DNA of 64,000 bases. Origin: Basidiobolus meristosporus CBS 931.73. Taxonomy: Eukaryota; Fungi; Basidiobolomycota. Below the pieces are notes generated by a model. It worked only from the letters and a program-made list of their open reading frames with translations, had not been told where the DNA came from and searched no databases. Position numbers and translations under genes: made by a program. The stretch covers positions 5,058 through 69,057 of the forward strand of contig MCFE01000473.1 in NCBI GenBank assembly GCA_002104905.1, given 5' to 3'. Positions 662 through 61,799 of the stretch are shown piece by piece. Every line of letters begins with the position of its first letter. Position 1 is the stretch's first letter.

Positions 662-1717
662 TTAAGCACTAGGCCTGTTCTCTTCAATCTTCAATGTGAA
701 GTCGTCGTTCGCTGTGTTCTCCATGTTCTCCATTTGCGTGTCAACTGGCTGGTAAGCAGCTGGCTTCTTGGAATCATCAAGCCCGTACATGTAGCTAGAG
801 TAAATGACCAAGGAGGAGCCGAAGACGAAGAGAAGCGTGATGTGGAAATCAAATAGATAGATGGAAAAGATGCTGGAAACAATGATAGAGATGCTGGTTG
901 CAAATCCTTTCAGAATATTGTCAGCATACTTCACCACGATGGCCACAATAATGCCGCCGCATGCTTGACAGGCAATGGCCATAACGGTGTAGATGTTGTA
1001 TCCATACCAGAAACCGTTGTTGATCACACTATCTCCGTCCATCCACAAAACTCCCAGGAAGACGGCTGGGAATAACGAGAAGAAGGACAATTGAATGTTA
1101 CGCACCCAAATCGAAGCCCGAGTTCCTTTGAGGATCTTTTCGAAGTAGACACCTGCTAGGCCGGAGATCATGCAAGCGCACACAACTGTGATGAGGCCCA
1201 GAAGTCTTTGATTGCTCTTGTCCTCGGTGCTTTCCGAGGTCTTGGTTGGGAATTGAACCAAGACAACACCGATGGTGAGCAAGACCAGGGCGAGCCACTT
1301 TTTCATACTCAAGCTTCTGCGGAGAATGATGACAGTGCAGAGGGCGGTGGTGAGGATTTTAAGTTGGTAGGTAACTTGGAAAGTGGCGGCGTCCAATAGA
1401 GTGACGGCGACGTATTGAAGGTTATTCTGGAGAGTATATAGCCCAGCGGGAATCATCAACTTCCACGCATCTCGCCCGAAGATTTCCGACATGACCTCCC
1501 GATAATTAACGTGCCCCTTAGTATTAAGTTCGTCACGGGCATGCATGACAAGGCAGATAATTAATTTAGTCAGTTCAGAGAGCGTCACAGCCGTGGATGT
1601 AGCGTAGTGGGGTGTTGTGTCTCTAGACTGGGTCATCACCAGCACCAGAGCACTATTTTGGATGACCAAAATAATTAAGCTCAGGTACTTCATGGGGATC
1701 ATTTCTAGGAGCTTCAT
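662..1717 (-). CDS. UDP-galactose / nucleotide-sugar transporter (SLC35A2 / gms1-like), about 351 aa, CDS intronless
   Basis: Motifs KYLSLIILVIQNSALVLVM, PAGLYTLQNNLQYVA, FQVTYQLKILTTA, SGLAGVYFEKILKG, GGIIVAIVVKYADNILKGFATS. The ATG at 1717 directly follows a CTAAC..TTTCCTCCAG acceptor, so the ORF-track extension to 1741 is intronic. Confidence 0.93.
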   Translation of the reverse strand: MKLLEMIPMKYLSLIILVIQNSALVLVMTQSRDTTPHYATSTAVTLSELTKLIICLVMHARDELNTKGHVNYREVMSEIFGRDAWKLMIPAGLYTLQNNLQYVAVTLLDAATFQVTYQLKILTTALCTVIILRRSLSMKKWLALVLLTIGVVLVQFPTKTSESTEDKSNQRLLGLITVVCACMISGLAGVYFEKILKGTRASIWVRNIQLSFFSLFPAVFLGVLWMDGDSVINNGFWYGYNIYTVMAIACQACGGIIVAIVVKYADNILKGFATSISIIVSSIFSIYLFDFHITLLFVFGSSLVIYSSYMYGLDDSKKPAAYQPVDTQMENMENTANDDFTLKIEENRPSA

Positions 1718-2318
1718 CTGGAGGAAAGAGAGGTTAGGCAAACTGAATTGTGGTTCGACAACGAAGCGGGAGCTTTGCCTTCTGTGGAAATAGAAATACC
1801 TTCAGGACTGAGCAATTTCACCGCAAAACTCTATTCGGCTCAGACAGAGTGCCAGAAGAGATTAGAGAAAAAAGCGAAGTCGGAGTGAGAGAAAAATGGG
1901 AGTTAAATGGTGAGTCAGGTTCCAGAAAAGGTGGACTATTTTCAGCTCAATTGATGTAGAAGACACTTGCCTTTGTACACTATAGGCTCACAATACCAAC
2001 AAAATATCCACAAATATCCCTATCTAAAATTAGAACATTCTCAGCTCGGACTTATTGGTCAGCGCATTGTGAGCTTCTTGACACACAGTATAACCAAAAA
2101 CGAGCCTCACGCCAGCCTGAGTTACATGTGCAACAGCAACAACGGGCTCTGAGTGGTAAATTCAGAAATAAATTAAGGTCTAGCTTGAGTGGCTTTTATT
2201 CAATTCTAAAGTGTTACAACTCCTTGGGTGTTCTTGGCCAGGGATATTAGTCAATCGATGCCCATGAGGCGTCATGAGAGTATGTTCAATATTGTGCGGG
2301 TATTTGCCAGACATCAAA

Positions 2319-2844
2319 TTACTGTTGCATGGCGTCAACAGGTTTGGCGGAGCGATCCTTGCGTTCAAGGAGGGCTTTGCGATCCTTATCGAGCTTGACG
2401 CTTGTGACGACAACCTTGGAGGGATGAACGCCAATGGCAGTGGTGGCGCCGTTGACCTTCTCACGGGTGAGGCGCTCGATGTGAATGACCCATTTCTTAC
2501 GATACACTTGGACAACCTTGCCTTCACGGCCTTTGTAAGTGCCGCGGACCACTTGGACCTCATCATCCTTGCGGACAGGGATAGAGCGGGCGTGGTACTT
2601 CTCTCTTAATTCCTTGGAAAGGGGGGCAGACATGATCTTTCTACGAATGCTGGAGGGGGCGGCGAAGTGGGCCTTGCGGCTCTTGCGGCGAGAAGCGCTG
2701 ACGTCTGCAAATGATCGAGGGGTGTTTAGTTGAACGTCCAAGTGTACTCGAGGGCTGGTATGCCAGCATATGACGAGAGCAAGGCTGCGGTGGGATGGAT
2801 GTTATGCTATGCTTTATTGGATATTTACCTTTGCTGAACTTCAT
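2319..2844 (-). CDS. RPL26: 60S ribosomal protein L26 (uL24); exons 2844-2829 and 2704-2319
   Basis: ATG AAG TTC AGC AAA G|GTAAAT...TTTGCAG|AC GTC splices to [24 protein letters not shown]...[33 protein letters not shown]. Confidence 0.97.
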
Positions 2845-3567: not shown

Positions 3568-4957
3568 ATGGGAGAGGTAGGTGGAGTATTGTTGTTTCAT
3601 GAGGTTGTTCGAAGCCTACAACTAACATCCACTAGTTTGAAGAGCTTATGAGGCTAGCTGCACAACACACCCGAGAAGTCGATAAGGAGCTGGAGCGAAA
3701 GAAGAAGCGACAGCAACTGGAAGAAGAGAGGAGGAAAAAGGGGGAGGAGAGAAGAAGACAGGAGGAGAAAGCTTCTTCTGCCGCCCAGCTAGCAGAGAGG
3801 AGAAAAAATGATTTAAAGCTGGAAAGGGAGAGGGAAGAGCGTAGGAGAGAGAAAGAGCGGGAATTGTTAAGAGAAAAATTAAAGAAAGATAATGCTAGAG
3901 AAAAGGAAGCAAAACCAGCCCCTTACAAAAGGGAAACATTGTTACCGCAACCAAAGCAAAAAGTTCGTTTGACTAGTTCTCTTCAACTTCCTATCTATGT
4001 CATATTAAGTGGTTTCTTACTTAGCCATCGTTGTCGTTCGATGATCTAATTAGCCAGGCTTCTGAAATCCCCACAACATCGCTCAAGCTTATCCCCACTA
4101 GTAGGGGGGAAAAGGGCTCAATGGGTCGCCACTCTAAAGTTTCAAAGAGCGTCCAGGGAAATCGGGCAGAGTTTAGGCGTACGTCTAGTTCCATAGAAGC
4201 AGATAGGAGCCGTTCTAGTCGACCTCAAGTCCATCGTAACCTAAGTGAAGCGAGCACAACGAAGGGTGTACTTAGATCTCGAGATGGTCATCAAAAGGAC
4301 AGTAGAGCAAACGCCTCCATTCCAAATCGTGACGCTCGACTTGATCTATCATCAAGATACACGCAATCTCCTATCTCAAGGGATGGTAAAAGATCCACCA
4401 GCGAACCCAGCACTGCTATCAAGGGAGCAAAAACACCCCCCATCCCCAAGTACTCAAATGACAAGCCCCGCCGCCGCAGTTTGTCACCACCAGGAAGATC
4501 TCGCAAGAGGGCCTCATCCCCGCGCAGACCATCGAGTCGGAAGTCGATTGACGAAAGTGATTTCAACGAGGATTATGTGAAGCAAAATAACATATCGTCC
4601 ATTATAGGCCAACTTTTCGGCTATGATAGATCCAGGTAAGCTGCCCATCTTATTCGGGGTTGATAGTTTATTCACCCGATTTGCAATTCAGGTACGCCAA
4701 TGAAAGGTACTCCGATGACGATATGGAGGCTAGCATCTCAGATCTCAGGAAGGAAGAATCTAGAAGGTATTTGACATAGTGAGCAATACAATACATACAC
4801 CGTAGCATCATCACTTAAGCTCTGTTCAATATCCAGCGCCAAGATAGCACGACTTGAAGATGAGCGTGAGGAGGAACTCGAGAGACTGGAGCAGGAGCGC
4901 CTTAGGGCTCGCAAAAAAGCTAGATTGGGGATGGATAAAAAGAAAAGCCCTCGTTAG
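3568..4957 (+). CDS. SPT2: SPT2-family chromatin protein; exons 3568-3576, 3636-3962, 4025-4635, 4692-4766, 4837-4957
   Basis: Four GT-AG introns of 56-70 nt splice in frame. They join MGEFEELMRLAA, a charged coiled coil, SFDDLISQA, a Ser/Arg-rich linker and the SPT2 C-terminal motif ISSIIGQLFGYDRSRY...DDMEASISDLRKEESRSAKIARLEDEREE. Confidence 0.85.
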
Positions 4958-5199: not shown

Positions 5200-7206
5200 T
5201 GCAGGCTATCCCGTGTTTTGCTATTCCAGGGAGAAAAAGATCACATTGGTGAGACAGGGTGCTCCATACGTTACCAGTGCCGTTGGTGAATAATTGGGCA
5301 GATCTAGAAATTCCACAGCCTGCATACCTCGCAAATAGCGGCATTACGACCACCTCACAGACAGCACAAGATCTGTAAGTGCTATTCAAATTCGCCGTAA
5401 ATCAAGATGCAAATAGAGATAGATCCAGCAATTGCATGGTGTCCAGCAAATCGTTTCCTCGTGAGGAGGACACTGGGCAATGCGTTGTAGAAGGTTACTC
5501 CGATCAGAAGGTACCGATTAAGTACGAGTGCTCGAGTCTGATTTATCGGCACAGATTGTTCTTGATCCTCTCTACTCCAGGTCGTGTTCCGCGACCGAGT
5601 GTTTCAGAATAGGCCATTCGAAGAAGCCGGAGTTTCATCCGATCAACTATTGCTTGGGTATACAAGCGCCGAAATGGAAATGATTGCTTCTCGTCAGCTT
5701 GGAAGACGTAAGCCTCCCCATTTGGGATTGAGAATACAATGCAAGAGAGTTTACGCAATCCGAGATCCATATGAACTTGGTACTGCATACGGATGCTCGC
5801 TTATTCTAAACCAAAAGGCCTCAGCATCTGATCTATCGTCTTACACATGATCAGCTCAACGATTCTGTTTCGTAAAAATTCCACAGATATGGTTCTAAAC
5901 CAGTTCTATATTCCCATGGACTTTGGAATACACTACTGGTTTCCACTCACCGTTAAGGGAGCCATTACACCACAGAAAACCGATAACATACCATTTGAGC
6001 AGCAATCCAGAGTCATTGTTGGCATTATCTTCGGGGAATGTTTAAGACAATACAGCTCTTGCCAGAAAAACCTGCTTTGTGCTGGTGGGGCTCGCAATAG
6101 GAGGTCGCCGTATCGGAACAAAGGACAGAGGGTTACTAAGCTATCTCACTAATGTGCTGCTCGGAGTCTTGGTTGGAGGGTGACCCTGATAAAGAGGCGC
6201 GGCAGCGCATCATCGTGTTATCATCAAATATCACTGCCAATTCTTGTGCTATGTAAACTGGCTAGACTCTTGCAGCATGGTTAATTTTACCAATAACAGC
6301 TGCGTAAAAGGGTGATACATATTCAGCGGATTACTAAAGATGTGCGAGAAGTGGTCTTTTAGGCTGTGGTTGGACGTTTTCTGGGTACACCTTGGATCAC
6401 AGATATTTACGTGCCATCAGCATGAATGTGGTTTGCTGCTCTACATGATTGGCTCTTGGACGCAAGAATACTGTTTGTAAAAGCTTGCGTCGATAAACTA
6501 TTGGTAAGCTTCCCAATTTGCCGATATTGGGGTAACCATTCGCCAACCCAGCTGATACGCTAATCATTGGTATGTACGCTTTCAGATTGGTCCTGTGCTA
6601 TCGAAAGAGACTGATCATCTACCCGGTTTTTCTCAGCGGAAGTAGGCTGCGATCAGAGTTCGATACACAGGAGTATAATTGTTTCGATCAAGAATGCACA
6701 ACTCTTGGATGATGCTTGTGCTAATTTGCTATTTAACAAAAATGGACTCCTCTATGCGCTATTGTGCACCTCCATAGGTATCCAACCGGTTGTGGGTTGA
6801 GTACTTAGCTAAGAGTCGTTTATGGAGGTTCCAGAGTATCGTCGAACCTTGGCTAGCCTGTACCTACTACAAATTACAAGGCTTTGAAACCCAGGAGGCT
6901 GGGCAGTGGAGTGATGTAACGGGGATCACTCAGCTTATGGTTATAATGTTTCTTGTAGCCATTGTCGGGTATTCGCCCCGACAACCAATTACGAGTAGAG
7001 CAACTCCACATTCTCACCGATTCCTACTGCTACTGCTACTGTCACACCTGGCTCGATCTTTGCCTTGATTTTATAGTTAGTCCAGTTGTTTCCATACAAA
7101 AGTTCTATTGGCCCCGACCCTTTACTAGGAGAATTCAGTTGAAAACCAGTTTGTCGGGCTGAAGAAGTATTGGCCAAGAGCCCTCGATCATTGTGATTTC
7201 ATTTAA
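5200..7206 (+). CDS. Candidate multi-exon orphan gene or pseudogene; only the last three exons modelled (6778-6915, 6959-7075, 7129-7206)
   Basis: Donors GTAACG and GTTAGT, TAG acceptors, and 43 and 53 nt introns give an open frame VSNRLWVEYLAKSRLW...KKYWPRALDHCDFI*. More short GT..AG segments lie upstream (e.g. near 5790-5820 and 5872-5903) but could not be joined with confidence. No family recognised; the start is approximate. Confidence 0.3.
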
Positions 7207-7350
7207 ATTAGGTTGTTTCTGTTGGGGAGTGGTGAGGCTGAGTAACAACAGGCCCATTAACTTCTATAAAACTCTGGCATTCCCCTCTGAAGTTCGTATA
7301 TCGCTTCTCCTTGTATATCACAGTAGCGTTATTTTCTTCATATCAAGGTC

Positions 7351-8298
7351 ATGGATCTGCTTGCCACCGACAGTATTCGCCTCCCGGAAATGATAGCTGC
7401 TCCGCATTATATGCAGAGTTCCAAGAATCCATCCGAGGTTTACATGAACATCTCACTATTCCCATTCAACAATATTCAGAAAAGTCTGGCGTCAAAGAGA
7501 TACACATACTGCGTAGTTCCTGAGGGCTATCACGCTCTTTTGGTCCCAGAGAGGGACTACCAGATTCTTACGAAAAAAATTGGCCCAACAGAAGGCCAGC
7601 ACATTCCAGCAAGAGGAAACGTGAAGACCGAGTCTTCAGTGGAAGATAAAGGAGACGCTCAGTCCGAGAAACCGCGTCGACCACCGAACCCATTCTTCTT
7701 GTTCAGGAAGGATAAACAAGCCAGTGTTTTTGCCCAGCACAGAGGGATCTCTAACCTGGAGGTTTCAAAGGTTGTTGGTAGAATGTGGAAAACTGCCAGC
7801 TTTCAAGAAAAAGAGTACTATCAGCGCTTGGCCGAGGAATTCAAGAAGGAGCATCAGGAGAAGTATCCGAATTACAAATACAGCCCGGCGAAGCAGAAGA
7901 GAAAGTGCAAGAAGAACGAGTGTGGATTCAGTAACAAACGCGCTCGATTCGTTCAACTCCCTATGAGTGAAGACTCTAGCCTTAACAGTCTTCTAACTAC
8001 CAGCCACAATATAACCTCGGTGCAGAAACCGCATGATTATGTATCGCCGACAGAGATACCACTGAGTGGGATACCGTCAAATGATTCACAAGAGTTCGAC
8101 ATCTCTACAGATTTGGATTCGCCAATATTTTCGGAATATGCTTTCCCTAGTGCTGAAGTATGGCCGGCTAGTAGTATACCACTCGAGCAGAGCCCTTGCA
8201 GCTTCAATGAGTTACACTTCTCGGACACCAACAAGTTGCTCTACAGCCAAGGATACTATGACCCTCTCTTGATATCACACCAATACTTGCAGAATTAG
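7351..8298 (+). CDS. MATA_HMG / SOX-TCF class HMG-box transcription factor, Mat-Mc-like; candidate mating-type protein, 315 aa, intronless
   Basis: HMG box at ~7669-7890: KPRRPPNPFFLFRKDKQ...ISNLEVSKVVGRMWK...YQRLAEEFKKEHQEKYPNYKYSP, followed by a basic tail. Upstream motif YCVVPEGYHALLVP (7507-7548); Ser/Pro/acidic C-terminus. HMG class is certain; a mating-type role is inference. Confidence 0.9.
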   Translation: MDLLATDSIRLPEMIAAPHYMQSSKNPSEVYMNISLFPFNNIQKSLASKRYTYCVVPEGYHALLVPERDYQILTKKIGPTEGQHIPARGNVKTESSVEDKGDAQSEKPRRPPNPFFLFRKDKQASVFAQHRGISNLEVSKVVGRMWKTASFQEKEYYQRLAEEFKKEHQEKYPNYKYSPAKQKRKCKKNECGFSNKRARFVQLPMSEDSSLNSLLTTSHNITSVQKPHDYVSPTEIPLSGIPSNDSQEFDISTDLDSPIFSEYAFPSAEVWPASSIPLEQSPCSFNELHFSDTNKLLYSQGYYDPLLISHQYLQN

Positions 8299-14424: not shown

Positions 14425-15639
14425 ATGCAGGTTCCAGAGGTCATTTACACATTGGTTAACACCCCCAAGGGCCCATTGCCAAACACCCCTTCGCATAAAT
14501 ATTCAGTCAGCAAAGGATTGCAAATCCCGTACTCACACCATCTAGTGTCCTATTCGATTACGAGCCCACAAAAAAGCATCATGTCATCTATCTCTACCTA
14601 TACCTCAGTCGATTCGCAGAACTCTGGCATTACCGATCTCCAGATTCCAGAGCGGTTCCTGTTCTCCGCAGTCAAGGAAAAGAAATCCAAAAAAAGCTTT
14701 AACTTTCCTAACCTTTTAAAAGTCAGATCGAGGAGTTCGAAGAAGAAGATCGTGGAACAGCTTCCATTGTTGGACGCGCTGCGAAAGCGGAATCTCCCGA
14801 CATTGGCTGAGCTTTACGGCTCATTTTCGGACAACATGGGGAACGGGGCGAGCGGGAATGTCCGGGCAACATTTTCTCTACGTGACGGGAAAAAATACGC
14901 AGTGAAGACGTACAGGGCCAAGCACGAAGGCCAGAAAAAGAAGCAGTACTTTGAACGTATCAGCAGCGAAATCTACATAGGTGCCTCCCTCTCCCATCGG
15001 AATATCATTCGCACGATTGATGTTATCATGGAGGAAGGCAAGATCCATCAGATCATGGAATTCTGTCCGAACGACCTTATCACCATTGTCCAAGGCGGCC
15101 TAGCATCTGCAGAGCAGCTCGACCAGTATTTCCTCCAGATGATGGAGGGCCTCAGGTATCTCCATCACCGGGGGGTCGCCCATCGAGATGTGAAGTTGGA
15201 GAATCTGTGCGTCAACGAAGAAGGGGTCCTGAAAATCATTGACTTTGGAAGTAGCTTCATCGTAACAAACCCGTTCGATCTGTTTCAAACAAAATCTGCC
15301 ACCTCCTTCGTGGGGACCGATCCATACATAGCACCGGAGATTCAGGACAGAAAGGCTTACGATGCTACCAAGGCTGATATATGGTCAGCTGGAGTGGTCT
15401 ACGTGGTGATGGTACTAAAGCGATTCCCCTGGAAGGCGGCCCTTCCAAGCGAGAAGAGCTATACGAGCTTTCTCCAAAACCGAGATCAGGACGAATTCTT
15501 CCGGCTGCTCCCTGCTGGGTCAATCCCGCTAATCCGGCAAATGCTGGATCCCAACCCAGATACACGTGCCACAATAGATGAGGTGTTTAATGATTCATGG
15601 TTGCAAAGCCTAAGAACCCCATCTTCGCTCGATACATAA
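14425..15639 (+). CDS. HAL/NPR-family (Hal4/Sat4/Hrk1-like) Ser/Thr protein kinase, intronless; true start may be the ATG at 14581
   Basis: Intact motifs GNGASG, YAVK, alphaC ISSEIYIG, HRDVKLEN, DFG, GTDPYIAPE, DIWSAGVV, FPW. Confidence 0.9.
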   Translation: MQVPEVIYTLVNTPKGPLPNTPSHKYSVSKGLQIPYSHHLVSYSITSPQKSIMSSISTYTSVDSQNSGITDLQIPERFLFSAVKEKKSKKSFNFPNLLKVRSRSSKKKIVEQLPLLDALRKRNLPTLAELYGSFSDNMGNGASGNVRATFSLRDGKKYAVKTYRAKHEGQKKKQYFERISSEIYIGASLSHRNIIRTIDVIMEEGKIHQIMEFCPNDLITIVQGGLASAEQLDQYFLQMMEGLRYLHHRGVAHRDVKLENLCVNEEGVLKIIDFGSSFIVTNPFDLFQTKSATSFVGTDPYIAPEIQDRKAYDATKADIWSAGVVYVVMVLKRFPWKAALPSEKSYTSFLQNRDQDEFFRLLPAGSIPLIRQMLDPNPDTRATIDEVFNDSWLQSLRTPSSLDT

Positions 15640-19424: not shown

Positions 19425-20857
19425 CCCTGTGCAAGATAGATTCTTATCTGAAATCTTTGAGTTTCAAGAGGAGTAATGCTGACTATAATATATACCATAA
19501 GCCAGATAGAGCAAATCTAGTTCTATTAGCTCTATATGTGAATGACCCTTTTATAGCCACTAATAACCTAGAAACATTAGAAGTGACTAAATCTAGCCTA
19601 TCTAAGAAGTTCAAGATATCCAATCTAGGAGAACTCAGTTACTAATTAGGGATTAAGCCGTCCATAGACTGAAGTACCCAGACTATTACCCTAAGCCAAT
19701 CCAAGTATATTCAAGATATACTAAAGAAGTACCAAATGGAAGACTGTAAACTGGCAGCTACCCCAATGAAAACAAACCTTAACTTGGTCAAAACTCAACC
19801 AAATCAAGAGAGCTTGGTGCCATCTGAAAGCCCTGACTTTCCTTATCAATCTATGGTTGGCGGTCTGATGTATATCATGCTTGGAACGCGTCCAGATATC
19901 TCATATTCAGTGGGAGTTGTCAGCCAACATAATCAGAACTATGGATCTGATCATATTGCAGCAGTTAAGCAGATTTTTAGTTATCTAAAAGGAACTACTG
20001 ATATCTGCTTAAGATACACTTATAAGGATTCAGAATAGGATCTTGTGGGATACTCTGATGCAGATTGAGGACAAAATTTGGAAGACAGAAGATCCACCAG
20101 GGGATACACCTTGCTTTACTGTAAAGGAGCAATTTCATGGAATTCAAGAAAGCAGCCAACTATAGCACTTTCTACCATAGAGGCAGAGTATATGGCAGCC
20201 TATGAAGCTGCAAAAGAAGTAATGTGGCTAAGAAAGCTTCTTACAGATTTAGGCCTATGTCAAAAAATGCCTATTACATTATTTCAAGATAATCAAGGAT
20301 GTATACAATTAGGTAAAAATCCAACTTTTCATGCTAGAACCAAGCAAATAAGTATTAGACATCATCTCATACATGAAGCTATAGGGAATAACTTAGTTAG
20401 ATTAGTTTACTGTCCTACAGATGAAAGATTGCAGACATGTTTACAAAACCATCAGCTAGTGACAAGTTTGAATATCTTAGGTCAAAATTAGGACTAGTCA
20501 GTATGAGCATTTAGCTGAGTGAGAGTGTTGTAAAGACTTGTATTTCCACCTAAATACTCCCCTAACTTAGTCACTTAGAGCATTACCTTCAAATCCTAGA
20601 GAATACTGACCAAATTCCTTGTTGGGATTTACTTGGATTATTTACCCAGAACATGAAAATTCTCAAAGTTGTCCAAACAGCCCCAAGCTTTGCACACATG
20701 TTCTTGGAACCTTTCTTAGTCTATTCTATCTGTTTGTAATGCCAAGATCATGTAAAAGTATAAATACTGCTTTTACATTCAATAAATCATTAAGTGAAAA
20801 CCACATAATCTACTTGGTCTCCCAATCACTTCCAATATCTCAAAGACTCTTACAACA
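19425..20857 (+). mobile_element. Ty1/copia retrotransposon, 3' fragment: RT end, RNase H, PPT and 3' LTR (20526-20857)
   Basis: Motifs LALYVND, YQSMVGGLMYIMLGTRPDI, ISWNSRKQPTIALSTIEAEYMAA, KQISIRHH. The LTR TGTTGTAAAG...CTCTTACAACA follows a purine-rich tract. Confidence 0.92.
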
Positions 20858-22962
20858 AAATCCCTATATGCAATGAGACAACACCCGTTGAAACAAATGC
20901 CCAGGATACTTTATGAAGGCAAGTGAGCCCAGTATTCCATCTACTGGTGAATGATGTAATGTTGTGGCAAGAGAAGTGGCATGTTTCCACTAATATCAGT
21001 AATGGGGGCTTTGAGGATTTATTACTACTTCTTGCCAAATTCATACCATGATGCAACTTACCATGTACATGGTACAAGTGGACAACCATCATGCAGCTGG
21101 CAACCTATGATCAAGCAACTGTCCTGATTCCAGCATGTGTTAACAGTTGCATGGCATTTACATCCAAAAATGCTACCATTGCATCATGTCCAAATTGTCA
21201 GGAATGCACCACCATTGAGGAAAAACATTGTTCCCACTCTAGATATATTCCAGTCATACACCATCTGAGGAAGCTGATGCAGTTCAACAAATATTGCAAA
21301 TCTATACAGTACCACAGTCAGTGTCAATCAAGTGCAAACATAATCAATATATTTGATGGCAAACATTACCAACAGCTAGGAAGCAAGGGCTACTTTGAAG
21401 GTGTGTATGACCATGCCTTTGCTTTAGCACTTGATGGATTCTTGTTAAACAAGCACTCTACCAGCAAATCCTGCTGGCCACTGATTCTCATCAATCTGAA
21501 TCTGCCACCCATCTTATGGTATCAGAGCAATAATCTGATGGTAGTCTCACTGGTATCTGGGCCTATATCACCATCCAACCTTGATGGCTACAAGTATCCA
21601 TTGCTGGATGAATTTTGTATGCTTTCCAGCAGGATAACCATGAAAGGCCATCATGTAAAAGCACATATTATTATCTGCATTGGAGTTACCCCAGCCATCA
21701 GCAAGATAGCAGGTTTTTCCAGGCACAATGGACAGTATTGCTGTCTAATGTGTGAGATCCAGGGGATTAATCCATAACTTGCCAACATTATTATTACCCA
21801 AACACTAGCACCAAGAAAATCATCTTTCCACAGAGAGAACACAGAGAAGTCAGTATGCAATTGCAGCAAAGTTGGCAAGCTATAAGCCATTGGCCAGAAT
21901 ATAGAATCAATAGGAAACCAGAGATACTCAAGATACAGGGTATCTGCTGGAGCAAATGCTTTCCATGGCAAGCAATGCATTTGCTTTTCAGCAATATCCC
22001 TATACTGATGACCAAGTTGTATAAGGGGTATTTCAGGCTAAGTGAGCCCTTTGAGATACTGGAGAAATTTGAAAGACTTGGCAAGATATTACAGAGTATC
22101 TGCTACCCTAAGTACTTCTCATGGGCTCCAATTAATATTCATACACACTTGCAATAATAATACAAATGCAAAGACTGGATGAGCAGGATATATATTTATT
22201 CAAGTGGTGTTCTGAAGCCATTCCTACCAAGAGTACATTGGAAGCATTGGTAGTCATATGTGGACATTGTGGGATTATATATCCAGAAGTCAATCACCAG
22301 TCCCAGCTTGACACATCTACAGCTATTGTGTGAGGAGTTTGTGATGGGATGTGAGTGGCTATACTAAAAACATAAAGCTGAATGAATAGATCTCTGCTGC
22401 TACTGTATCCATCCTCTACTCCATCTTGCATGGTGTGTGGGAAATATTGGGCCTTGCTTCACCTTCTGGGAGTTTCTATGGAGCAGATGTATGGGGAGAT
22501 AGGAAGACAAGTCAAGTTGCTGGTACTACCATATCCTAATCTCATCAAGAATATTACCTTCAAGTCCATCATGGATGTGATGAGTTGTCACATGGAGGAC
22601 AGTCAAGAAGAGTTGGAAAATCTGAGGACAAATGTGCACATGGAGACACCTATGCCTATGGCATTAAGAAGCTAAGCAGCTGCAATGTGTGGGTAATTAG
22701 TTAAGTAATGCAAGGTTAGGTTGGGTGCAACAAGCAACTTATGTTTACCAGGAAAACTCTACCAAGATATGCCAGATTTCCCATGGCCACAAGCCAACTT
22801 CTACACCATTCAGTGCAGAATTCACATAAACAAAAGCCAGAGCACACCTATCAGGGGAACTAGAATCCAGCAGGGAGAAGGAATATATTGGCTAAATATT
22901 GCGAAGTTCTTTGCAGATATTCAGGAGGTATTCATGGCAGAAGTGGGAACTATTAAGCATAT
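20858..22962 (+). mobile_element. CACTA/EnSpm copy A, transposase region (host of copy B; continues at 28748-29207 and ~30395-30430)
   Basis: Tnp2-like motifs FDGKHYQQL, ALALDGF, SCWPLILINLNLPP, IGVTPAISKIAGFSRHNGQYCC, HPLLHLAW...WEF; colinear with copy B at 25970-28070. Confidence 0.9.
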
Positions 22963-23269
22963 TCCTATGAAAAATTATTGAGATGATCCCATCAAAAGGC
23001 CGTCACACAGTTAATGTCCCATGACTAAGAGGTACTGATCTTGTCAGGACACTGTCCAGAGACTGTGAAAAATAATTGAACCCCAGATTTCACAGAACAC
23101 TTTGTCAAAATTTTTCATCACAACAATGTATAAGTGGCTTTTGATTGCTTGCCTGCCAATTTGCTCACTATCTGATCCCGGACACTCTATTGCCTCCTAT
23201 GTTGTGTGAGTTGATTGGCTATTGCCTCTTTTTCACACTCCTTACTTCCTGACTCAACCATTGCTCTCA

Positions 23270-25357
23270 CTTTTCATGCGTAGGAATTGACTAATTTCCA
23301 TTGAAACTTCAGTTGTACATCAATTGCCAATTGTATTGACCTATACAAGTCTCTATACCCTACACTAACATTAAGCCCAACCTCACACTCAACAAGTAAC
23401 TCCATTAAAATCCACCACTCAATAGGTATTTCTGCTGTAAAGCTCTGGTTCCACAACTATGGCAGGAACCTAACGGCTTTATGACACTGTTCATTCACTG
23501 GTTCCCACACATCCTGGTCTTCAGCCAGCACTACAAGGTCTAGCTCCTCATCTGCCAGTCTCTGCAATAAATCCTTGCAATATTCCAGTGTGTTTTCTTG
23601 AGCACTGCTCTTGAAGAAGTGCTGCAACCTCTTGGTGTGCCTATTAATGTTCCAAAACTTCACTGAAGGCATTGTGATAGTCTTTTAAGCTCTTGATGTT
23701 GTAGACTTGTCTGTCAGTGGGATCTCCACTCTGTCAGAAATGGAGGCTGTGGAGGCTTTGGTAGACAAATTGTCTTTTTCAGCAAACTCATCTACCTTGC
23801 TGGAGTGTAGCTCAACTGACTGCACTTCCAACTCTTGTGAAAACAGCTGTTCTCTTGTTAGTAATTCTTCTTGGCTATGATGGGATTCAGTCTGTTCCTG
23901 GCTTGCAGCATTAATTGGCAAGAGCTGCAGTTTTTTTTGCATGCATCCCTGTCTCAGGCTTGGGTAGACATTTTTCCCTTTAACTTTTCCTTTATCACTG
24001 CCAGGTCTTTCACTGCTACTTTGTCTGAGTGCTTTGTGTAAACAAATACGTTTCTCCTCAATAAATTCTGCTCTGACGCATCTGTTTTGGCCTGCTTGTC
24101 CCTTGCTGGCACTCATCTGGCAACCTGACGTTTCTTTTCAGCATGTTTTGAGCTCTCAACCATAGTTGTGATGGGCTCCTGTATAAGCAACTGGTTTTTA
24201 TCTCTGCCAGATCCTTCACTGCTACTTTGACTGGATGCTTCTTGAGTGGTACTACTCTTTTTCCTTGATAATGTTGTGCTGGTGCATTCATGTCTGCCTG
24301 CTTTTCCTTGATTGGCACTCTTCCAGCTGCCTGACATCTCTTTGACACTGGTATGGAGCTTTTGGCCCTGCTTGTAACAGGCTCTTGAGGAAGTTGCTGG
24401 TTTTTAGCCATGGCACCCTTGTTCTTCTGCCTTTGATAGTTTCTGCTATTCTTAAGATACTTTCTTACCATACCAATGCTGGCCCAAAATTCATTTGCCC
24501 GTTTGAATCCAGGATAATGCTCATGGAACAAGTCAAGTGCATTCTGCTTGGCCTTGAGTTCCTGATGGTCCCATGGTATGCTGGCCTTAAGGTGATGGTG
24601 TGCCAGACTTCTGAAGGCCTCTTGTATATTAGCCCACTCTTCACTATTGCACTCAACAGCTTCATGGATCTTCAATGTCATTCGATTTTTAGGCTTTGGT
24701 GTAAACATCACATTGTCTCCTCCCATGCTGTCATAGGTTTTCTGTGGGCTTTATCTTTGGGCACTGTTGTTGTGCTTCAAAGACTGTACAGTGTTCCTCT
24801 GCTGTTACATTGGGAAATGGCTCAATTCTTGGCTGTGACATTGAGCTACTTGAGTTTCTTCTTTGCAGCAAAGATACTGCTTTCTCTACCTGGGATATTA
24901 ATTGCTCTACACGTATTATCTGCTCATTCTGTTTCTGGACTACTTCCTGATTTCTCTGGGCCATTTCATCTATCCTGTCAGCCATTGCACCTAATTGCTT
25001 CATTAATGCTCTGGTATGAGCTGACAACATACTTGCTAATATGGGTGGTGGTGATGTTATTGTGGCCACTTGCTGATCTTCAACAGAGGGTACTGTATTT
25101 GCTACATTCTCCTCTGCCTGAGCATAATAGTCAGCTTATGGCTCCGCAGAGGTTCCCAGTTGCCTACTTGACTGAGAGCCTGAGGAGTCCGCATTATTAC
25201 CTTCAATGGGCACACTGTCCACAGGGCATTTTTTGGATGTACCCCCACTTGTTGCACTGAATGTCAAAGCAAGCTGTTGTCCAACCATTCTTCTGTTGCT
25301 GTCAGTGGTGGGGTTTAGTTGAGAAACAGACAACTTTGCTTTATTTTTTGGTGGCAT
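23270..25357 (-). pseudogene. CACTA accessory gene (ORF X), frameshifted
   Basis: ORF pieces MPPKNKAK..., LMKQLGAMADRIDEMAQRNQE (coiled coil), and LKASIPWDHQELKAKQNALDLFHEHYPGFKRANEFWASIGMVRKYLKN; repeated in copies C and D. Confidence 0.7.
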
Positions 25358-25559
25358 ATATATGGAAGTGAGTCAAACCAAAGGGGTAATAGTGTTACAT
25401 ATACATGTGTATGTGGTGCCACAACTTTATTTATAATGCTTACTATGGCAGGTCATTATTGTATCTTACATTCATGTAGATGCAATGTCTCAAACACAAG
25501 ACTGTCTTAAGTTCACATGAGTAGTGACCAAAAAGTGATATAATAGCATTACATTGTTG

Positions 25560-28510
25560 AAGGTCAAACTGTTTGCCCCATGGACAAGACTACTTTGACT
25601 CAATGCCATAAGAGAAGAGAAAAAAGACCATGTGGCTATTGTGGCAAGCCTCTCAACCATGAAGCACGCAGACAGCATAAGAAGTATTACAAGGACCACA
25701 GCCAGTGTTTTGCTACCCAAATCATATTTAACCATTCATTGGTCACTACCATACCAACACTATCTTGCCAGCCAGTTGATACTTCTATATTGGCACCTGG
25801 CTGTCTTTGTCACCTTATGCAAACTGAGTTAGGTGAGTTTGTGACGCCTTTAGGCTCACCTCAGCATTCTGAATAGGGCATGCAGAGTGATAGCTCTGAC
25901 AAACAAGGTTCACTGATGGATTTTGAGCCTATCTCCCCTAATAACAGTACCATGTATGAGCCCGGTCAAATCCCTATATGCAATGAGACAACACCTGTTG
26001 AAACAAATGCCAAGGATACTTTATGGAGCCAAGTGAGCCTAGTAATCCATCTACTGGTGAATGATGCAATGTTGTGGCTAGAGAAGTGGCGTGTTTCCAC
26101 TAATATTGGTAATGGGGGCTTTGAGGACTTATTACTACTTCTTGCCAAACTCATACCATGATGCAACTTACCATGTACCTGGTACAAATGAACAACCGTC
26201 ATGCGGCTGGCAACATATGATCTAGAGACTGTACTGATTCCAGCATGTGTTAACAGTTGCATGGCATTCACATGCAAAAATGCTACCATTGCAATGTGTC
26301 CAAATTGTCAGGAATCCACCACCATTGAGGGAAAACATTGTTCACACACCAGATATATTCTGGTCATACACTGTCTGAGGAAGCTGATGCAGTCCAACAA
26401 ATATTGCAAAGCTATATAGTACTGCACTCAGTATCAATCAAGCCCAAACATATCCAATATATTTGATGGCAAACATTACAAACAGCTAAGAAGCAAGGGC
26501 TACTTTGAAGGTATGTATGACCATGCCTTTGCATTAGCACTTGAGGGATTCTCATTAAACAAGTACTCTACCAGCAAATCCTGCTGGCCACTAATTCTCA
26601 TCAATCTGAATCTGCTGCCCATTTTGCAGTATCAGAGTAATAATCTGATGGTAGTCTCACTGGTATGTGGGCCTAAATCACCACCCAACCTGGATAGCTA
26701 CCTGTATCCATTGCTGGATGAGTTTTGTATGCGTTCCAGCAGGATAACTGTAAAAGGCCGTCATGTAAAAGTACATATTATTATCTGCATTGGAGATACC
26801 CCAGCCATCAGCAAGATAGTAGGTTTTTCTGGGCACAAAGGATGGTATTGCTGTCAAATGCGTGAGATCCAGGGGATTTACTCCATAACTCACACACATT
26901 ATTATTACCCAAACACCGGCACTAAGAACATCATCTTTCCACATAGAGAACATACAGAAGTAAGCATGCAATTGCAGCAAAGTTGGCAAGCTATAAGCCA
27001 TTGGCCAGAATATGGAATCAATTGGAAACCAGCAATACTTAAGATACAGGGTATCTGTTAGAGCAAAAGCTTTCCACAGCAAGCAATGCATTTGCTTTTC
27101 AACAATATCCCTATAATGATGACCAAGTTGTACATGTGGCATTTCAAGCTAAATGAGCCCTTTGTAATACCGGAGAAATTTGAAAGAATTGGCAAGATAT
27201 TACAGAGCATCCGCTACCCTAAGCACTTCTCACAGTCTCCAATTAATATTCATATGCATATGCAACAATACAAAAGCAAAGACTGGATGAACTGGATATG
27301 TATTTATTCAAGTGGTGTTCTGAAGCCATTCCTACTGAAAGTACAATGGAAGCATTGGGAGTCATATGTGGACATTGTAGGATTATTTGTCCAGAAGCGG
27401 ATCACCAATGCCAACGTGTTGCATCTACAGCTGTTGTGTGAGGAGTTTGTGACAGGATTTGAGTGGCTATACTACAACCATGAAGCTGAATGCGTAGATC
27501 TCTGCTGCTACTGTATCCATTCCCTACTCCATCTTGCATGGTTTGTGGAGAATATCAGGCCTTGCTTCACCTTCTGGGAGTTTCCTATGGAGTGGATGTG
27601 TGGGGAGAAAGGAAGACAAGTCAAGTTGAAGGTACTACCATATCCCAATCTCATCAAGAATATTACCTTCAAGCCTGTCATGGATGTGATGAGTTGGCAC
27701 ATGGAGGACAGTCAAGAAGAGTTGGAAAATCTGAGGACAAATGTGCACCTGGAGACACCTATGCCTATGGCATTAAGAAGCTAAGCAGTCCCAATGCATG
27801 GGTAATCAGTTAAGTAATGTAAAGTTGGGTTGGGTGCAACAAGCAACTAATTTTTATCAGGAAAACTCCACCAAGAAATGCCGGATTTCTTGTGATCACA
27901 AGCCAACTTCTACACCATTCAATACAGAATTCACACAAACAAAAGCCAGAGCGCACCTATAAGGGGGACCAGAATCCAGCAGGGAGAAGGAATATATTGG
28001 CTAAATGCTAAGAAGTTCTTTGCCAATATTCAGGAGGTATTCATGGCAGAAGTGGCAACAACCAAGCATACATTTGCAAGATGTATATGCTACCAGCAGT
28101 ACAAGGCATATGGCAACTTTGCAAGTATCACACTAAAAAGCCGTAAAGTTGAGGTGATAGAAGTATATCAATTGTGGCAGGTGTGCGCATTTGCAGAGGT
28201 TAGTAAGCAGGAGGCCATAGTTTTTTAGATTCAAACTAAATGTGGAATACCCAAGGTAGTGGTAGGTAAGCAAATAAAGAAAGGTGATTCTACAGTGGAA
28301 TATATGAATTGCACAAGGGGAGGTAGCAAAAGGAAATACCTTTTGGTAAATTGGTACGGTAGCATTATACAGAACCAGCGGCAGGCCGTCATACTGCCAA
28401 GAAAAAGCCATCAGAGTCTTGCTGTGAGGCCGTTGAGATACCATCAAGTTTCTTGCCATATAAGGCAATTGGAAGTCCTGGCCAACTGGATCCACTTAAA
28501 ATAGTAATAG
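25560..28510 (+). pseudogene. CACTA Tnp2-family transposase, disrupted
   Basis: N-terminal RPCGYCGKPL, then CVNSCMAF..CPNCQE, FDGKHY, IGDTPAISKIVGFSGHKGWYCC, and DUF4218-like IHSLLHLAWFVENIRPCFTFWEFPMEWMCG. Confidence 0.88.
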
Positions 28511-29207
28511 AGTGCTGAAAGACTGCAACAATGCCATGCAAATATTTTAACAGCACCAATCAAAAATCATCAAGCTTTATCCCTTTATTTGGCTGTAAAA
28601 TTTGCAAAACACCGTCATGATCTTGTTATAAGATTGTCAGGAGGGTCACTAACTCCAAGCTGCTGTTATTATGATGGTCTCTAAACGGGATCTTGACGGA
28701 TGATCTGGATTGAATCCACCTGTGGGACCAAATTATTTTTTGTAAGGTATGTTTGCAAGATGTATATGTTACCAGCAGTACAAGGTATTTAGCTACTTTG
28801 CAAGTATCACACTAAAAAGCTGTAAAGTTGAGGTGATAGAAGTATGTCAATTGCAGCAGGTGTGGGGGGTGATTCTACAGTGAAGTATATGAATTGCACA
28901 AGGGGAGGTGGAAAAAGGAAATACCATTTGGTAAAGTTGTATGGTAGCATTATACAGAACCAGCTGTAGGCCATCATATTGCCAATGTAATGCCATCAGA
29001 GTCTTGCTGTGAGGCTGTTGCAATACTGTCAAGTTTCTTGCTATATAAGGCAATTGGATGTCCTGGCCAATTGGATCCACTTAAAATAGTTATAGAGCGC
29101 TTAAAGACTGCACCAATACCATGCAAATATTGGCACAGCACCAATTAAATCTTGTCATGTTTTATTCCTTTGTTTGGTTGTAAAGTTAGCAAAATACCAT
29201 TGTAATC

Positions 29208-30394
29208 TGTTGTGTTGTATTATGATTAGTTTGGGGCTTGTTCTACAATGTAGAGGCTAATCAATAATATACAACAACTTCCAGTATGCTAATACTGAAA
29301 TAGTTTATTGGGAGTTTGCTATACCAATAGAAGATATAACTTTCACTAATTTCCTCAATCTTAGGCTCAAAATATACTGTAGGCAGTGCCTATCACTTCT
29401 ACAGCAGTGTTCTGACCTTCTGTTGACTTTCTAAGAAAATATTTCCAAGTATGGAAATTTTGAACTCCCCTTTAACCTAAAGGGGTGTGTTGTAGAAGTC
29501 TCTCAAGGGGTCTTGAGACCTAAAGGGGTGTCTAAAGGGGTCTCTTTAGAGTAAAGGGGCTTCTTGTAGTGGTCTCTAAAGTGGACTTTACACTAAAGGG
29601 GTGCCTAAAGGGGCTTCTTTAGAGTAAAGGGGTTTCTTAAAGGGGTCTCTAAAGGGGTCTTTAGACTAAAGGGGTGTCTAAAGGGGTGCCTTTAGAGTAA
29701 AGGGCTTTCTTAGAGGGGACTTTTCTGACAGAAAAGTGGTAGTTTCTTGTAGAACTTAGCTTGGATTCTTGTGAGCTTTGCAGTCTCTCTACTGATGTGG
29801 TACCAATCAAAGTCAGAATACTCAACAGTGCAAGAGATGCAGGGGAAGTCTTATAACCTTTAAACTTGTAATCATAGTGTGGAGATTCTGGAAAGAAAGG
29901 CTCCCTCTTTATTTTTCAGCTGGGGAAGTCATATATATGATATTTCTGAAGGATCAAAGTTTTTGGGTGATTGCGCAAGCAATACACGTGATACAAAGCC
30001 AAAAATAGCAGTGGCGCAGATTGGACATAGGTGCAGCACCTGTGAAAGTTTCACGTGATATGAATGGCTGGTTCAAAAGTTACACGCGATCAAAGTCACC
30101 ATAGTAATCCTAGCAATAAGGCATAGTATACATATTAATTGGACTCTTTTGGTCATAACTCCTTAAGTACTGCTTCAAATGAGCTGTGATTTGAAACATG
30201 AGTTGGCTACTATGTGTTCTGTATGAAATAATATTCTTAGGTGGATTGCTTGCCAGGGTCTGGAGCAGTTGTTCTTCAAAGTTGGAAATTCTTGATCTTT
30301 CACTTGTGTGTTACAATAGCAAAAGCAAAATAAAGAAATGAGTGCAATATTGGTTTAGAGATATTGTAGTAATGGAATACTTTCCATTACCACA
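29208..30394. mobile_element. 1187-bp solo LTR-like insertion (gypsy-type 4-bp TSD) in CACTA copy A
   Basis: TGTTGTG...ATTACCACA with TSD AATC on both sides; second copy at 36122-37187. Confidence 0.85.
29477..29722 (+). repeat. Degenerate TAAAGGGG tandem array inside the large solo LTR
   Basis: 13 GGGG runs plus one GGG counted in ~245 bp; the second copy has only 4 (36447-36510). Confidence 0.85.
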
Positions 30395-30479
30395 AATCCT
30401 TTCACATGACTGTTGGGAGGGTCATTAAAGTTTGGTATTTCATATTTAGATTTCTACAAACCCTATTAATCTCCTGATA

Positions 30480-35030: not shown

Positions 35031-35048
35031 ATTGGTGATCACACTAAT

Positions 35049-40326: not shown

Positions 40327-40334
40327 AACAAAGC

Positions 40335-50435: not shown

Positions 50436-50462
50436 GTTTTTGCCCTGAGCAATGATCACTAC

Positions 50463-61779: not shown

Positions 61780-61799
61780 TCTTGAATATGATACCATCG

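What the first reader, a model, noticed from the sequence alone, without database searches (positions are those of the whole stretch)
7351..8298. Candidate mating-type gene: MATA-HMG protein with a Mat-Mc-like motif outside the HMG box
Seen: an intronless MATA/SOX-class HMG box preceded ~40 aa upstream by YCVVPEGYHALLVP. Knowledge, from memory and needing verification: S. pombe Mat1-Mc has AYFVPDGFTPILIP at about the same position, and its box (RPPNAFILYRKEKHATL...NNSQVSKLVGEMWR...HQKMYPGYKYQP) aligns closely with RPPNPFFLFRKDKQASV...SNLEVSKVVGRMWK...HQEKYPNYKYSP. A shared V-P-[ED]-G-[YF]-x-x-[LI]-L-[VI]-P motif outside the DNA-binding domain suggests orthology, not just generic HMG similarity. 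Inference: this may mark an undescribed MAT locus. If the host is an early-diverging fungus, as the RPL26 [11 protein letters not shown] and SPT2 IIGQLFGYDRSRY motifs hint, the motif would be a very old MAT-HMG signature.
Basis: partly seen in the sequence, partly recalled or inferred. Interest (0 to 1): 0.82.

Follow-up and report, generated by a model that had tools for sequence, protein, structure and literature searches.

The report
Mc-type HMG regulator gene in Basidiobolus
This is an intact, apparently expressed gene for an HMG-box DNA-binding regulator that shares an ancient N-terminal signature with the fission-yeast mating-type protein Mc, but it is one of several such genes in this self-fertile fungus and nothing shows that it marks a mating-type locus.

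Summary
Window 7351-8298 (+) is an uninterrupted 315-aa ORF with one SOX/SRY-like HMG box (residues 106-180). About 50 residues upstream lies YCVVPEGYHALLVP.

The remembered likeness to Mc is real. A profile of the N-terminal element built without the query finds it at residues 35-67 (20 bits). It is the only hit in the window's six frames, and 0 of 5000 shuffles exceed 8 bits.

The element occurs before the box in:
- Schizosaccharomyces and Neolecta Mc;
- the Pneumocystis matMc genes that complement an S. pombe Mc null;
- chytrids;
- Jimgerdemannia (Endogonales);
- all Glomeromycotina "MATA-HMG" hits.

No Pfam model covers it.

The MAT-locus inference is not supported.
- The window is Basidiobolus meristosporus CBS 931.73 (MCFE01000473.1), from a group reported as homothallic.
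- The gene stands alone among housekeeping genes.
- A second isolate, 10-13% diverged, and B. ranarum carry the same gene.
- The genus keeps at least three element-bearing paralogues, one in an SLA2 cluster that this scan noted before on other DNA.
- Glomeromycotina keep about three lineages per genome.

It is a new, under-annotated member of a known family: the public model covers only 72 aa.

The parts
7351..8298 (+). Coding sequence of the 315-aa HMG-box protein (stop codon included). Single exon.
   Evidence: ORF list. In-frame stops upstream of the ATG. The public annotation calls only 72 aa of it (P0003).
7453..7551 (+). N-terminal 'Mc element' (residues 35-67), predicted as helix, two strands and helix. 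The core YCVVPEGYHALLVP is residues 53-66 (7507-7548).
   Evidence: Element HMM built without the query: 20 bits, unique in the window, 0/5000 shuffles above 8 bits. Pro57 is invariant and Gly59 and Leu64 nearly invariant in the family. Model: H39-47, E51-54, E63-66, H67-76 at pLDDT 73-83.
7666..7890 (+). HMG box (residues 106-180) of the sequence-specific SOX/SRY/MATA type.
   Evidence: Pfam PF00505 E 1.6e-18. SRY and SOX17 are the best solved relatives. Foldseek target TM about 0.9 to SOX11/17/SRY, pLDDT above 95.
8083..8295 (+). C-terminal tail, predicted disordered, with acidic/aromatic patches conserved in B. ranarum (DSQEFDISTDLDSP.., YDPLLI.HQY.QN). A possible activation region.
   Evidence: 52% identity over residues 145-315 with the B. 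ranarum orthologue. pLDDT below 50. The activation role is inference.
6343..7350 (+). Probable 5' leader of the transcript, with a 67-nt intron at 6569-6635 (GTATGT...CAG).
   Evidence: Run X3 holds only short, 100%-identical contigs confined to 6343-8293. One skips 6569-6635, and the splice sites are read. Caveats: only 24 nt lie beyond the joint, under the tool's 31-nt rule, and X3 is not on record as RNA.
662..1741 (-). Neighbour: nucleotide-sugar transporter (PF04142), not the TPT family of mucoralean sex loci.
   Evidence: Pfam E 7e-110, with no PF03151 hit. Public gene call.
2319..2741 (-). Neighbour: ribosomal protein L26.
   Evidence: Pfam PF16906 E 2.8e-36.
3568..4957 (+). Neighbour: SPT2 chromatin protein (public gene model with introns).
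   Evidence: PF08243 on the public model at L006 5891-7280, which is window 3568-4957.
14425..15639 (+). Neighbour: Ser/Thr protein kinase. It is linked to the HMG gene in B. ranarum too, but closer and on the opposite strand there.
   Evidence: Pfam Pkinase E 1.1e-55. 48% identity to the B. ranarum neighbour.
19700..64000 (.). Transposon-rich tract (copia-like piece, CACTA/En-Spm transposase, several Ty3-type elements) that starts after the kinase gene.
Evidence: Pfam Transposase_21, RVT_1, Integrase_H2C2, gag and protease hits. ORF at 19736.

Best explanation
The gene encodes a member of the Mc-type subfamily of fungal MATA-class HMG-box transcription factors in Basidiobolus meristosporus.

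Shown:
- It is an intact single-exon ORF.
- It has a small, separately folding N-terminal element of about 35 residues (helix, hairpin around VPEGY, helix), a flexible linker, one sequence-specific HMG box and a disordered C-terminal tail.
- The same three-part layout is found in the Taphrinomycotina mating-type protein Mc and in homologues from chytrids, Endogonales and Glomeromycotina.

Inferred:
- The box binds and bends a SOX/Mc-type site.
- The tethered N-terminal element is a docking surface for a partner regulator. In S. pombe, Mc is reported to work by recruiting the HMG protein Ste11.
- The tail activates transcription.
- The gene most likely takes part in the control of sexual or developmental genes, as most fungal MATA-HMG genes do.

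It is one of at least three element-bearing paralogues kept in the genus. It sits in an ordinary gene neighbourhood in a homothallic lineage, so it is a conserved regulator gene and not a mating-type idiomorph.
For: - ORF and box.
- The element is significant and in register with Mc: phmmer aligns query 40-185 to Mc 27-175; motif and spacing; HMM and shuffles.
- Named carriers: Schizosaccharomyces Mc, Neolecta Mc, Pneumocystis matMc, chytrids, Entrophospora, Jimgerdemannia. All 96 new profile hits carry it.
- Models: the element is folded at pLDDT 73-88, the linkers are below 50, and pTM is 0.39-0.50, so it is tethered and not docked.
- Constraint and expression: a diverged isolate shows 90 substitutions and no indel over 7540-8281 while the flanks have many indels; transcript-like spliced contigs lie on the gene only; canonical intron.
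- Orthologue in B. ranarum with a 90% identical box and the kinase neighbour.
- Paralogues: B. ranarum K7432_006289 and the SLA2-cluster HMG in both species.
- The family tree follows the species groups.
Against: - The query's element is the most divergent in the family: 20 bits against 25-70 for the others, Cys for Phe, His-Ala for Glu/Thr-Pro, and no Gly before the first strand. Of the second small block (D-C-R-L-P-x-Y) only Pro86 survives.
- The HMG-box tree does not place the box inside a Mc clade. In the element-plus-box tree the query is a long branch, weakly sister to chytrids.
- No functional data exist for any Basidiobolus HMG gene.
- The partner-docking role of the element is inference. 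I could not read the Mc/Ste11 paper.
- The expression evidence rests on contigs of a run not recorded as RNA, and on a joint with only 24 nt on one side.
Confidence: 0.75

Rival explanations
1. The gene marks the mating-type (sex) locus of Basidiobolus: an Mc orthologue that determines one mating type, with an alternative idiomorph in other strains.
For: - The Mc-type element and box are shared with bona fide MAT genes of Taphrinomycotina.
- In L005 the same kind of protein sits between a homeodomain gene and a small convergent gene, the Taphrinomycotina fused-MAT layout.
- The gene borders a 45-kb transposon-rich tract.
- The ORF is no better conserved than its 5' leader between isolates: 12-13% against 9%.
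Against: - A second isolate, diverged by 10-13%, has a collinear 12-kb contig with the same gene in place. B. ranarum has it too, with the kinase neighbour.
- There is no second HMG box, homeodomain gene or repeat in the window, and the neighbours are housekeeping genes.
- There is no TPT/RNA-helicase or SLA2 synteny here.
- Several paralogues carry the element.
- Entomophthoromycota are described as exclusively homothallic (PMC3734969).
Confidence: 0.07
2. It is a paralogue that has left sexual regulation and controls some other programme (as Rox1 does in budding yeast). The N-terminal element would be only an inherited remnant.
For: - It has the most degenerate element of the family and has lost the second block.
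- The family is multi-copy in Basidiobolus and Glomeromycotina.
- It has a long C-terminal tail that Mc lacks.
- If X3 is RNA, the transcript-like contigs would come from a culture whose growth stage is not known to me.
Against: - The invariant Pro57 and the nearly invariant Gly59 and Leu64 are kept, and the element is still predicted to fold.
- 11 of 12 HMG-box genes of Podospora act in the sexual cycle (PMC3730723), so a sexual role is the prior for this class.
Confidence: 0.15
3. It is a decaying or silent gene copy without function.
For: The public annotation did not call the full gene. It lies next to a transposon-rich tract.
Against: - The 315-codon ORF is intact.
- There is no indel across 7540-8281 at 12% divergence, while the flanks are full of indels.
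- The orthologue in B. ranarum has an open frame and a 90% identical box.
- Transcript-like spliced contigs lie on the gene.
Confidence: 0.03

Closest known systems
Mat-Mc / matMc, the M-specific HMG-box mating-type protein of Taphrinomycotina (Schizosaccharomyces, Pneumocystis, Neolecta)
   Same: - Single MATA/SOX-type HMG box.
- The N-terminal element (G-x-x-[YF]-F-[VI]-P-x-G-[FY]-x-P-[VIL]-L-[VI]-P in the family; the query's version is degenerate: Y-C-V-V-P-E-G-Y-H-A-L-L-V-P, without the Gly) lies at the same distance from the box: 52 residues here against 56 in S. octosporus Mc.
- phmmer aligns query 40-185 to Mc 27-175.
   Different: - Mc proteins are 170-250 aa and end soon after the box. 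This protein has a 135-residue tail.
- The second block (C-R-[VL]-P-x-Y) is nearly lost here.
- Mc lies at a MAT locus beside Mi and/or a homeodomain gene, whereas this gene lies between SPT2 and a kinase with no partner.
- The box is only about 36% identical.
Glomeromycotina 'MATA-HMG' / 'SexM-like' multigene family
   Same: Same layout of element, second block and box. The family is multi-copy within a genome, and its members are not shown to determine mating type (PMC3834313).
   Different: The AMF proteins keep a near-perfect element (YFIPEGFEPVL[IV]P), often with long Gln-rich inserts between element and box, and they form their own clade (99*) apart from the query.
The SLA2-IDP-linked HMG cluster of Basidiobolus (one gene annotated 'MAT1-2-1, partial')
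   Same: It is in the same genome. One of its genes carries the element (FFFVPNGFVPVLMMD, 28.8 bits). The other has the box most similar to the query's outside its own orthologue, at 56% identity.
   Different: That cluster has two HMG genes around SLA2 and is conserved in B. ranarum. The present gene is solitary, and the two share nothing outside the box or element.
SexM/SexP of the mucoralean sex locus (TPT-HMG-RNA helicase)
   Same: Both are HMG-box regulators in an early-diverging fungus, and a transporter of the drug/metabolite superfamily lies 5.6 kb away.
   Different: - The transporter is a nucleotide-sugar transporter (PF04142), not TPT (PF03151).
- RPL26 and SPT2 lie between it and the HMG gene.
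- No helicase was seen and no idiomorph.
- SexM/SexP sequences could not be fetched, so their boxes were not compared.

Membership tests
Mc-type MATA-HMG subfamily (Mat-Mc and relatives) | One sequence-specific (SOX/SRY/MATA-class) HMG box | tested here: met
   PF00505 E 1.6e-18. SRY and SOX17 are the best solved relatives. Foldseek target TM about 0.9.
Mc-type MATA-HMG subfamily (Mat-Mc and relatives) | N-terminal element ([YF]-F-[VI]-P-x-G-[FY]-x-P-[VIL]-L-[VI]-P with a preceding helix) 45-60 residues or more before the box | tested here: met
   HMM built without the query: 20 bits at residues 35-67, unique in the window, 0/5000 shuffles above 8 bits. Pro57, Gly59 and Leu64 are kept. The spacing is 52 residues against 56 in Mc. 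This is the weakest score in the family.
Mc-type MATA-HMG subfamily (Mat-Mc and relatives) | Second small block [DE]-[CV]-[RK]-[LVF]-P-x-[YFL] between the element and the box | tested here: inconclusive
   Only the nearly invariant Pro (Pro86, in GQHIPARG) is kept. The chytrid members also lack a clear block.
Mc-type MATA-HMG subfamily (Mat-Mc and relatives) | The box groups with Mc in a phylogeny | tested here: inconclusive
   The 83-column box tree is unresolved: the query pairs only with its B. ranarum orthologue (98*) and then with P0012. In the element-plus-box tree the query is on the non-AMF side (99*) but outside the Taphrinomycotina clade, on a long branch.
Mc-type MATA-HMG subfamily (Mat-Mc and relatives) | Mc function: rescue of an S. 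pombe mat1-Mc null, activation of M-specific genes | not testable with these tools
   Shown for Pneumocystis matMc (PMC5821091). No data exist for Basidiobolus.
Mating-type / sex locus (idiomorphic) | Unrelated alternative sequences at the same site in different strains | tested here: not met
   A second isolate has a collinear 12.2-kb contig with the same gene at 87-91% identity. B. ranarum also has the gene. Only two further genomes were seen, and the lineage is reported as homothallic.
Mating-type / sex locus (idiomorphic) | Partner mating-type genes next to it (homeodomain Pi, small Mi, second HMG or alpha-box gene) | tested here: not met
   tblastn finds one HMG box only in 64 kb and no homeodomain match. 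The public gene calls show none. The search for a homeodomain used a single query and is of low sensitivity.
Mucoralean / microsporidian sex-related locus | HMG gene flanked by the TPT transporter and an RNA helicase | tested here: not met
   The transporter is PF04142 with no PF03151 hit, and RPL26 and SPT2 separate it from the HMG gene. No helicase appears among the called genes or scanned ORFs.
Ascomycete MAT locus | Synteny with SLA2 (and APN2) | tested here: not met
   There is no SLA2 in this window. SLA2 lies in another HMG cluster of the same genome.
Pezizomycotina MAT1-2-1 | Conserved intron inside the HMG box (from general knowledge of MAT1-2-1 genes) and the absence of the Mc element (from memory only) | tested here: not met
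   The box is read through without interruption. No MAT1-2-1 sequence could be fetched for a direct comparison.

The most novel reading that the evidence does not exclude
The N-terminal element is an undescribed, separately folding partner-binding module. Together with the box it would define a pan-fungal 'Mc-type' regulator that was already present in the common ancestor of chytrids and Dikarya. On this reading the ancestral fungal sex regulator was a two-module Mc-like protein and not merely 'an HMG protein'. The Basidiobolus gene would then be a working component of the self-fertile sexual programme, acting with its element-bearing paralogues.
Probability: 0.3. Interest if true: 0.7.

Novelty: new member of a known kind. 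Interest (0 to 1): 0.45.

Why it matters
For this locus the result is sobering. A good-looking MAT candidate turns out to be a conserved, solitary member of a multi-copy regulator family in a self-fertile fungus.

Two things are still of use:
- The public annotation of B. meristosporus misses three quarters of the protein, including the element. Surveys of mating genes in early-diverging fungi that rely on such models will overlook it.
- The element gives a marker sharper than the HMG box, whose trees are notoriously unresolved, for tracing Mc-type regulators from chytrids to fission yeast. It also gives a concrete target (Pro57, Gly59, the hairpin) for testing how these proteins recruit partners.

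I found no Pfam model and no mention of the element in the papers I could read. That is not proof that it is undescribed.

Tried and rejected
- **Word-index searches.** The whole protein and its box region found only the B. ranarum orthologue. The exhaustive search was needed.
- **Query protein on record.** The query protein itself is not on record.
- **HMG-box tree.** The 119-row, 83-column tree was too unresolved to decide between Mc, Ste11, Rox1 or SexM/P. The careful search for the family tree did not finish in 300 s, so the quick tree was used.
- **Protein atlas.** The search with residues 28-100 gave no usable hit.
- **Fold search.** Foldseek against the PDB matched only the box. I could not inspect model coordinates, so docking of the element was judged only from pLDDT and pTM.
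- **Synteny.** The chytrid loci share none with the window's flanks. The kinase beside the B. ranarum tandem HMG pair is unrelated to the window's kinase.
- **Repeats and RNA families.** None were found around the gene, and the window holds no tRNA gene.
- **Literature.** The Mc/Ste11 paper (PMC1170025) is not held. The searches for a description of the motif found none.

Full report
**1. The observation**

The ORF at 7351-8298 on the + strand is present exactly as described: 315 codons starting at an ATG. In-frame stops lie shortly upstream of the ATG. Pfam places one HMG box at residues 108-176 with E 1.6e-18. The closest solved structures by sequence are SRY and SOX17. The modelled box superposes on SOX11, SOX17 and SRY with target TM-scores near 0.9 and rmsd 1.1-1.5 A. 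The sequence YCVVPEGYHALLVP is at residues 53-66, and 52 residues separate its proline from the start of the box.

**2. Host and locus**

A 72-aa protein fragment 100% identical to the query (P0003) is encoded on contig MCFE01000473.1 of Basidiobolus meristosporus CBS 931.73 (GCA_002104905.1). The gene order there is 60S acidic ribosomal protein, nucleotide-sugar transporter, RPL26, SPT2, HMG, protein kinase. That locus is identical to the window at all 17,893 compared positions.

The public annotation calls only 72 residues of the box, so the N-terminal element and the C-terminal tail are unannotated.

**3. The motif is real and is shared with Mc**

The exhaustive protein search gave 6509 hits. 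Twelve of the best 150 aligned from query residues 36-56 onward, well upstream of the box. A pattern scan and then an HMM showed that about 50 of the 158 proteins in hand carry a conserved element of about 37 residues before the box. Its consensus is PSLEPLSTKDALSLYEQGKGSAYFIPEGFEPVLVPND.

The HMM was built without the query. It still finds the query at residues 35-67 with 20 bits. This is the only hit in 1597 six-frame segments of the window (next best 5.8 bits), and no shuffle out of 5000 exceeds 8 bits.

Named carriers are:
- Mc of Schizosaccharomyces octosporus, S. osmophilus and S. cryophilus (VPEGYTPLLVP, 56 residues before the box);
- Neolecta irregularis Mc;
- the HMG proteins of six Pneumocystis species;
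- the chytrids Rhizophlyctis rosea, Thoreauomyces humboldtii and Geranomyces variabilis;
- Jimgerdemannia flammicorona (Endogonales);
- many Glomeromycotina.

The Pneumocystis proteins T551_02162 and T552_02831 are the matMc genes that rescue an S. pombe matMc null mutant (PMC5821091). Functionally validated Mc orthologues therefore carry the element.

An unnamed contig (L005) has an element-bearing HMG gene between a homeodomain gene and a small convergent gene. This is the fused MAT layout described for Pneumocystis and Taphrina (PMC4313921).

Its congeners confirm the point.

A second small block ([DE]-[CV]-[RK]-[LVF]-P-x-[YF]) lies between element and box in most members. The query keeps only its proline, Pro86.

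No Pfam model covers the element in any of seven members, even at E 10. The papers I could read on Mc, matMc, MATA-HMG families and AMF HMG genes do not mention it.

**4. Structure and likely mechanism**

With a 36-sequence family alignment the query model gives H39-47, E51-54, E63-66 and H67-76 at pLDDT 73-83. A low-confidence linker follows, then the box at pLDDT above 95 and a disordered tail. The model of S. octosporus Mc, built with 66 sequences, gives pLDDT 78-88 for the element, below 50 for the linkers, and pTM 0.50.

The element thus looks like a small, separately folding or partner-induced module tethered to the box, without a confidently predicted contact to it. Nothing in the PDB matched it.

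I infer a partner-docking role. The published model is that Mc activates M-specific genes by recruiting Ste11 to weak sites (Kjaerulff et al. 1997, seen only as a title in the reference list of PMC5821091; the paper itself is not held). This part is inference.

The C-terminal tail is conserved with B. ranarum in acidic and aromatic patches. It may be an activation region, which is also inference.

**5. Is the gene alive?**

Run X3 comes from the same study as the source genome. It holds only short contigs, all 100% identical and all within 6343-8293. One of them skips 6569-6635, a 67-nt stretch with GTATGT...CAG ends. This pattern fits transcript contigs, and it suggests a leader of about 1 kb with an intron. 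The caveats are that the run is not recorded as RNA and that only 24 nt lie beyond the joint.

Runs X4 and X6, from another isolate filed under the same species label, give a 12.2-kb contig collinear with 5300-10821 at about 87-91% identity. Over 7540-8281, inside the ORF, there are 90 substitutions and no indel. The upstream and downstream flanks carry many indels. That is the signature of a coding constraint.

B. ranarum has an orthologue with a 90% identical box. Its contig ends just 5' of the box, so its element cannot be seen. Its kinase neighbour is 48% identical but lies closer and on the opposite strand.

**6. Is it a MAT locus?**

The evidence says no.
- The two other genomes examined carry the same gene at the same place.
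- The 64-kb window holds one HMG box only. A simple search finds no homeodomain gene, and no direct or inverted repeats flank the gene.
- The neighbours are housekeeping genes. The transporter is PF04142, not the TPT of mucoralean sex loci. There is no helicase and no SLA2.
- The element is not confined to MAT genes. All 96 further profile hits carry it, and Glomeromycotina keep about three old paralogue lineages per genome. AMF HMG genes of this kind are known to be multi-copy (PMC3834313).
- Basidiobolus itself has at least three element-bearing loci:
  - this one;
  - K7432_006289, in a tandem HMG pair in B. ranarum;
  - the HMG gene beside SLA2-IDP in both species.

  The SLA2 cluster also holds the gene annotated 'MAT1-2-1, partial'. 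Its box is the query's nearest paralogue at 56% identity, but it lacks the element. Earlier notes of this scan described that cluster on other DNA of the same genome.
- Entomophthoromycota are described as exclusively homothallic (PMC3734969), although another paper says Basidiobolus species vary (PMC7466969). In a homothallic species no idiomorph is expected.

**7. Phylogeny**

The box alone (83 columns) does not resolve. The query joins its B. ranarum orthologue (98*) and then P0012. The motif label is clustered (15 changes against 36 in shuffles) but is not one clade.

With element plus box (266 columns, quick search) the tree shows:
- a Glomeromycotina clade (99*);
- a Taphrinomycotina Mc clade (95*);
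- a chytrid clade (86), with the query as a weak, long-branch sister.

The second Basidiobolus paralogue is unresolved. The tree broadly follows the species groups, which fits old, vertical inheritance. It does not prove one-to-one orthology of this gene with Mc.

**8. Verdict**

The likeness to Mc is confirmed and extended. The MAT-locus inference is not supported.

The gene is a new, under-annotated member of a known kind: an Mc-type MATA-HMG regulator. The wide conservation of the N-terminal element across four fungal phyla is the most interesting by-product and appears not to be modelled or discussed. I did not test its presence in MAT1-2-1, SexM/P, Ste11 or Rox1, because I could not fetch those sequences.

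Noticed in passing
window 7678-7893 (L006 10001-10216): The public annotation of B. meristosporus CBS 931.73 calls only a 72-aa fragment of the HMG box for this gene. The 315-codon ORF, with its N-terminal element and tail, is unannotated. The neighbouring kinase is called as 352 aa against a 404-codon ORF.
   Followed up: yes
L002 4570-7357 (B. ranarum JASJQH010000272.1): A tandem pair of different HMG genes. The first has the box near its N-terminus (FMTYR type, like the chytrid boxes) and no element. The second (K7432_006289) carries the element. They are followed by an MLKL_N-kinase gene and a Vps10/sortilin gene. For a homothallic species this is as good a sex-locus candidate as the SLA2 cluster.
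   Followed up: partly
L007 (B. meristosporus MCFE01000677.1) and L008 (B. ranarum JASJQH010006900.1): The HMG / SLA2 / IDP / HMG cluster is conserved in both species. The HMG gene next to SLA2 carries the element (FFFVP[ND]G[FY]VPVLMMD). The one next to IDP ('MAT1-2-1, partial') has a 366-codon open frame, far longer than its 111-aa public model.
   Followed up: partly
L005 9049-11029 (Logan SRR33594885 contig): An unnamed organism shows a homeodomain gene, an element-bearing HMG gene and a 74-aa convergent gene side by side. This is the fused matPi/matMc/matMi layout of Pneumocystis and Taphrina, so it is probably an undescribed Taphrinomycotina MAT locus.
   Followed up: no
window 5300-10821 against runs X4, X6: The isolate filed under the same species label as the source differs by 10-13% at the DNA level, with several replaced intergenic pieces (8743-8978, 9734-10152). 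This points to a cryptic species or a mislabelled strain. Transitions dominate, with G>A the most frequent change.
   Followed up: no
window 14425-15639 against L001 3371-4597: The HMG-kinase linkage is kept between B. meristosporus and B. ranarum, but the kinase is inverted and 2.7 kb away in B. ranarum, against 6.1 kb and the same strand here. The 6-kb spacer in the window has no called gene.
   Followed up: partly
window 8260-8295 and L001 640-673: The extreme C-terminus (YDPLLISHQYLQN / YDPLLIPHQYFQN) is conserved between the two species and weakly echoes the PLLVP end of the N-terminal element (0.5 bits only, so probably chance).
   Followed up: no
proteins P0229 and P0255: An AMF-type element-bearing HMG protein is filed under the plant Anthurium amnicola as 'Mc'. 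A 53-aa fragment of a Furculomyces-type HMG protein is filed under an Acinetobacter metagenome bin. Both are likely contaminants in public records.
   Followed up: no
window 19700-64000: About 45 kb of nested transposons follow directly after the kinase gene: copia-like, CACTA Transposase_21 at 21091-21777, and Ty3-type gag/protease/RT/integrase at 37-46 kb and 55-59 kb.
   Followed up: partly
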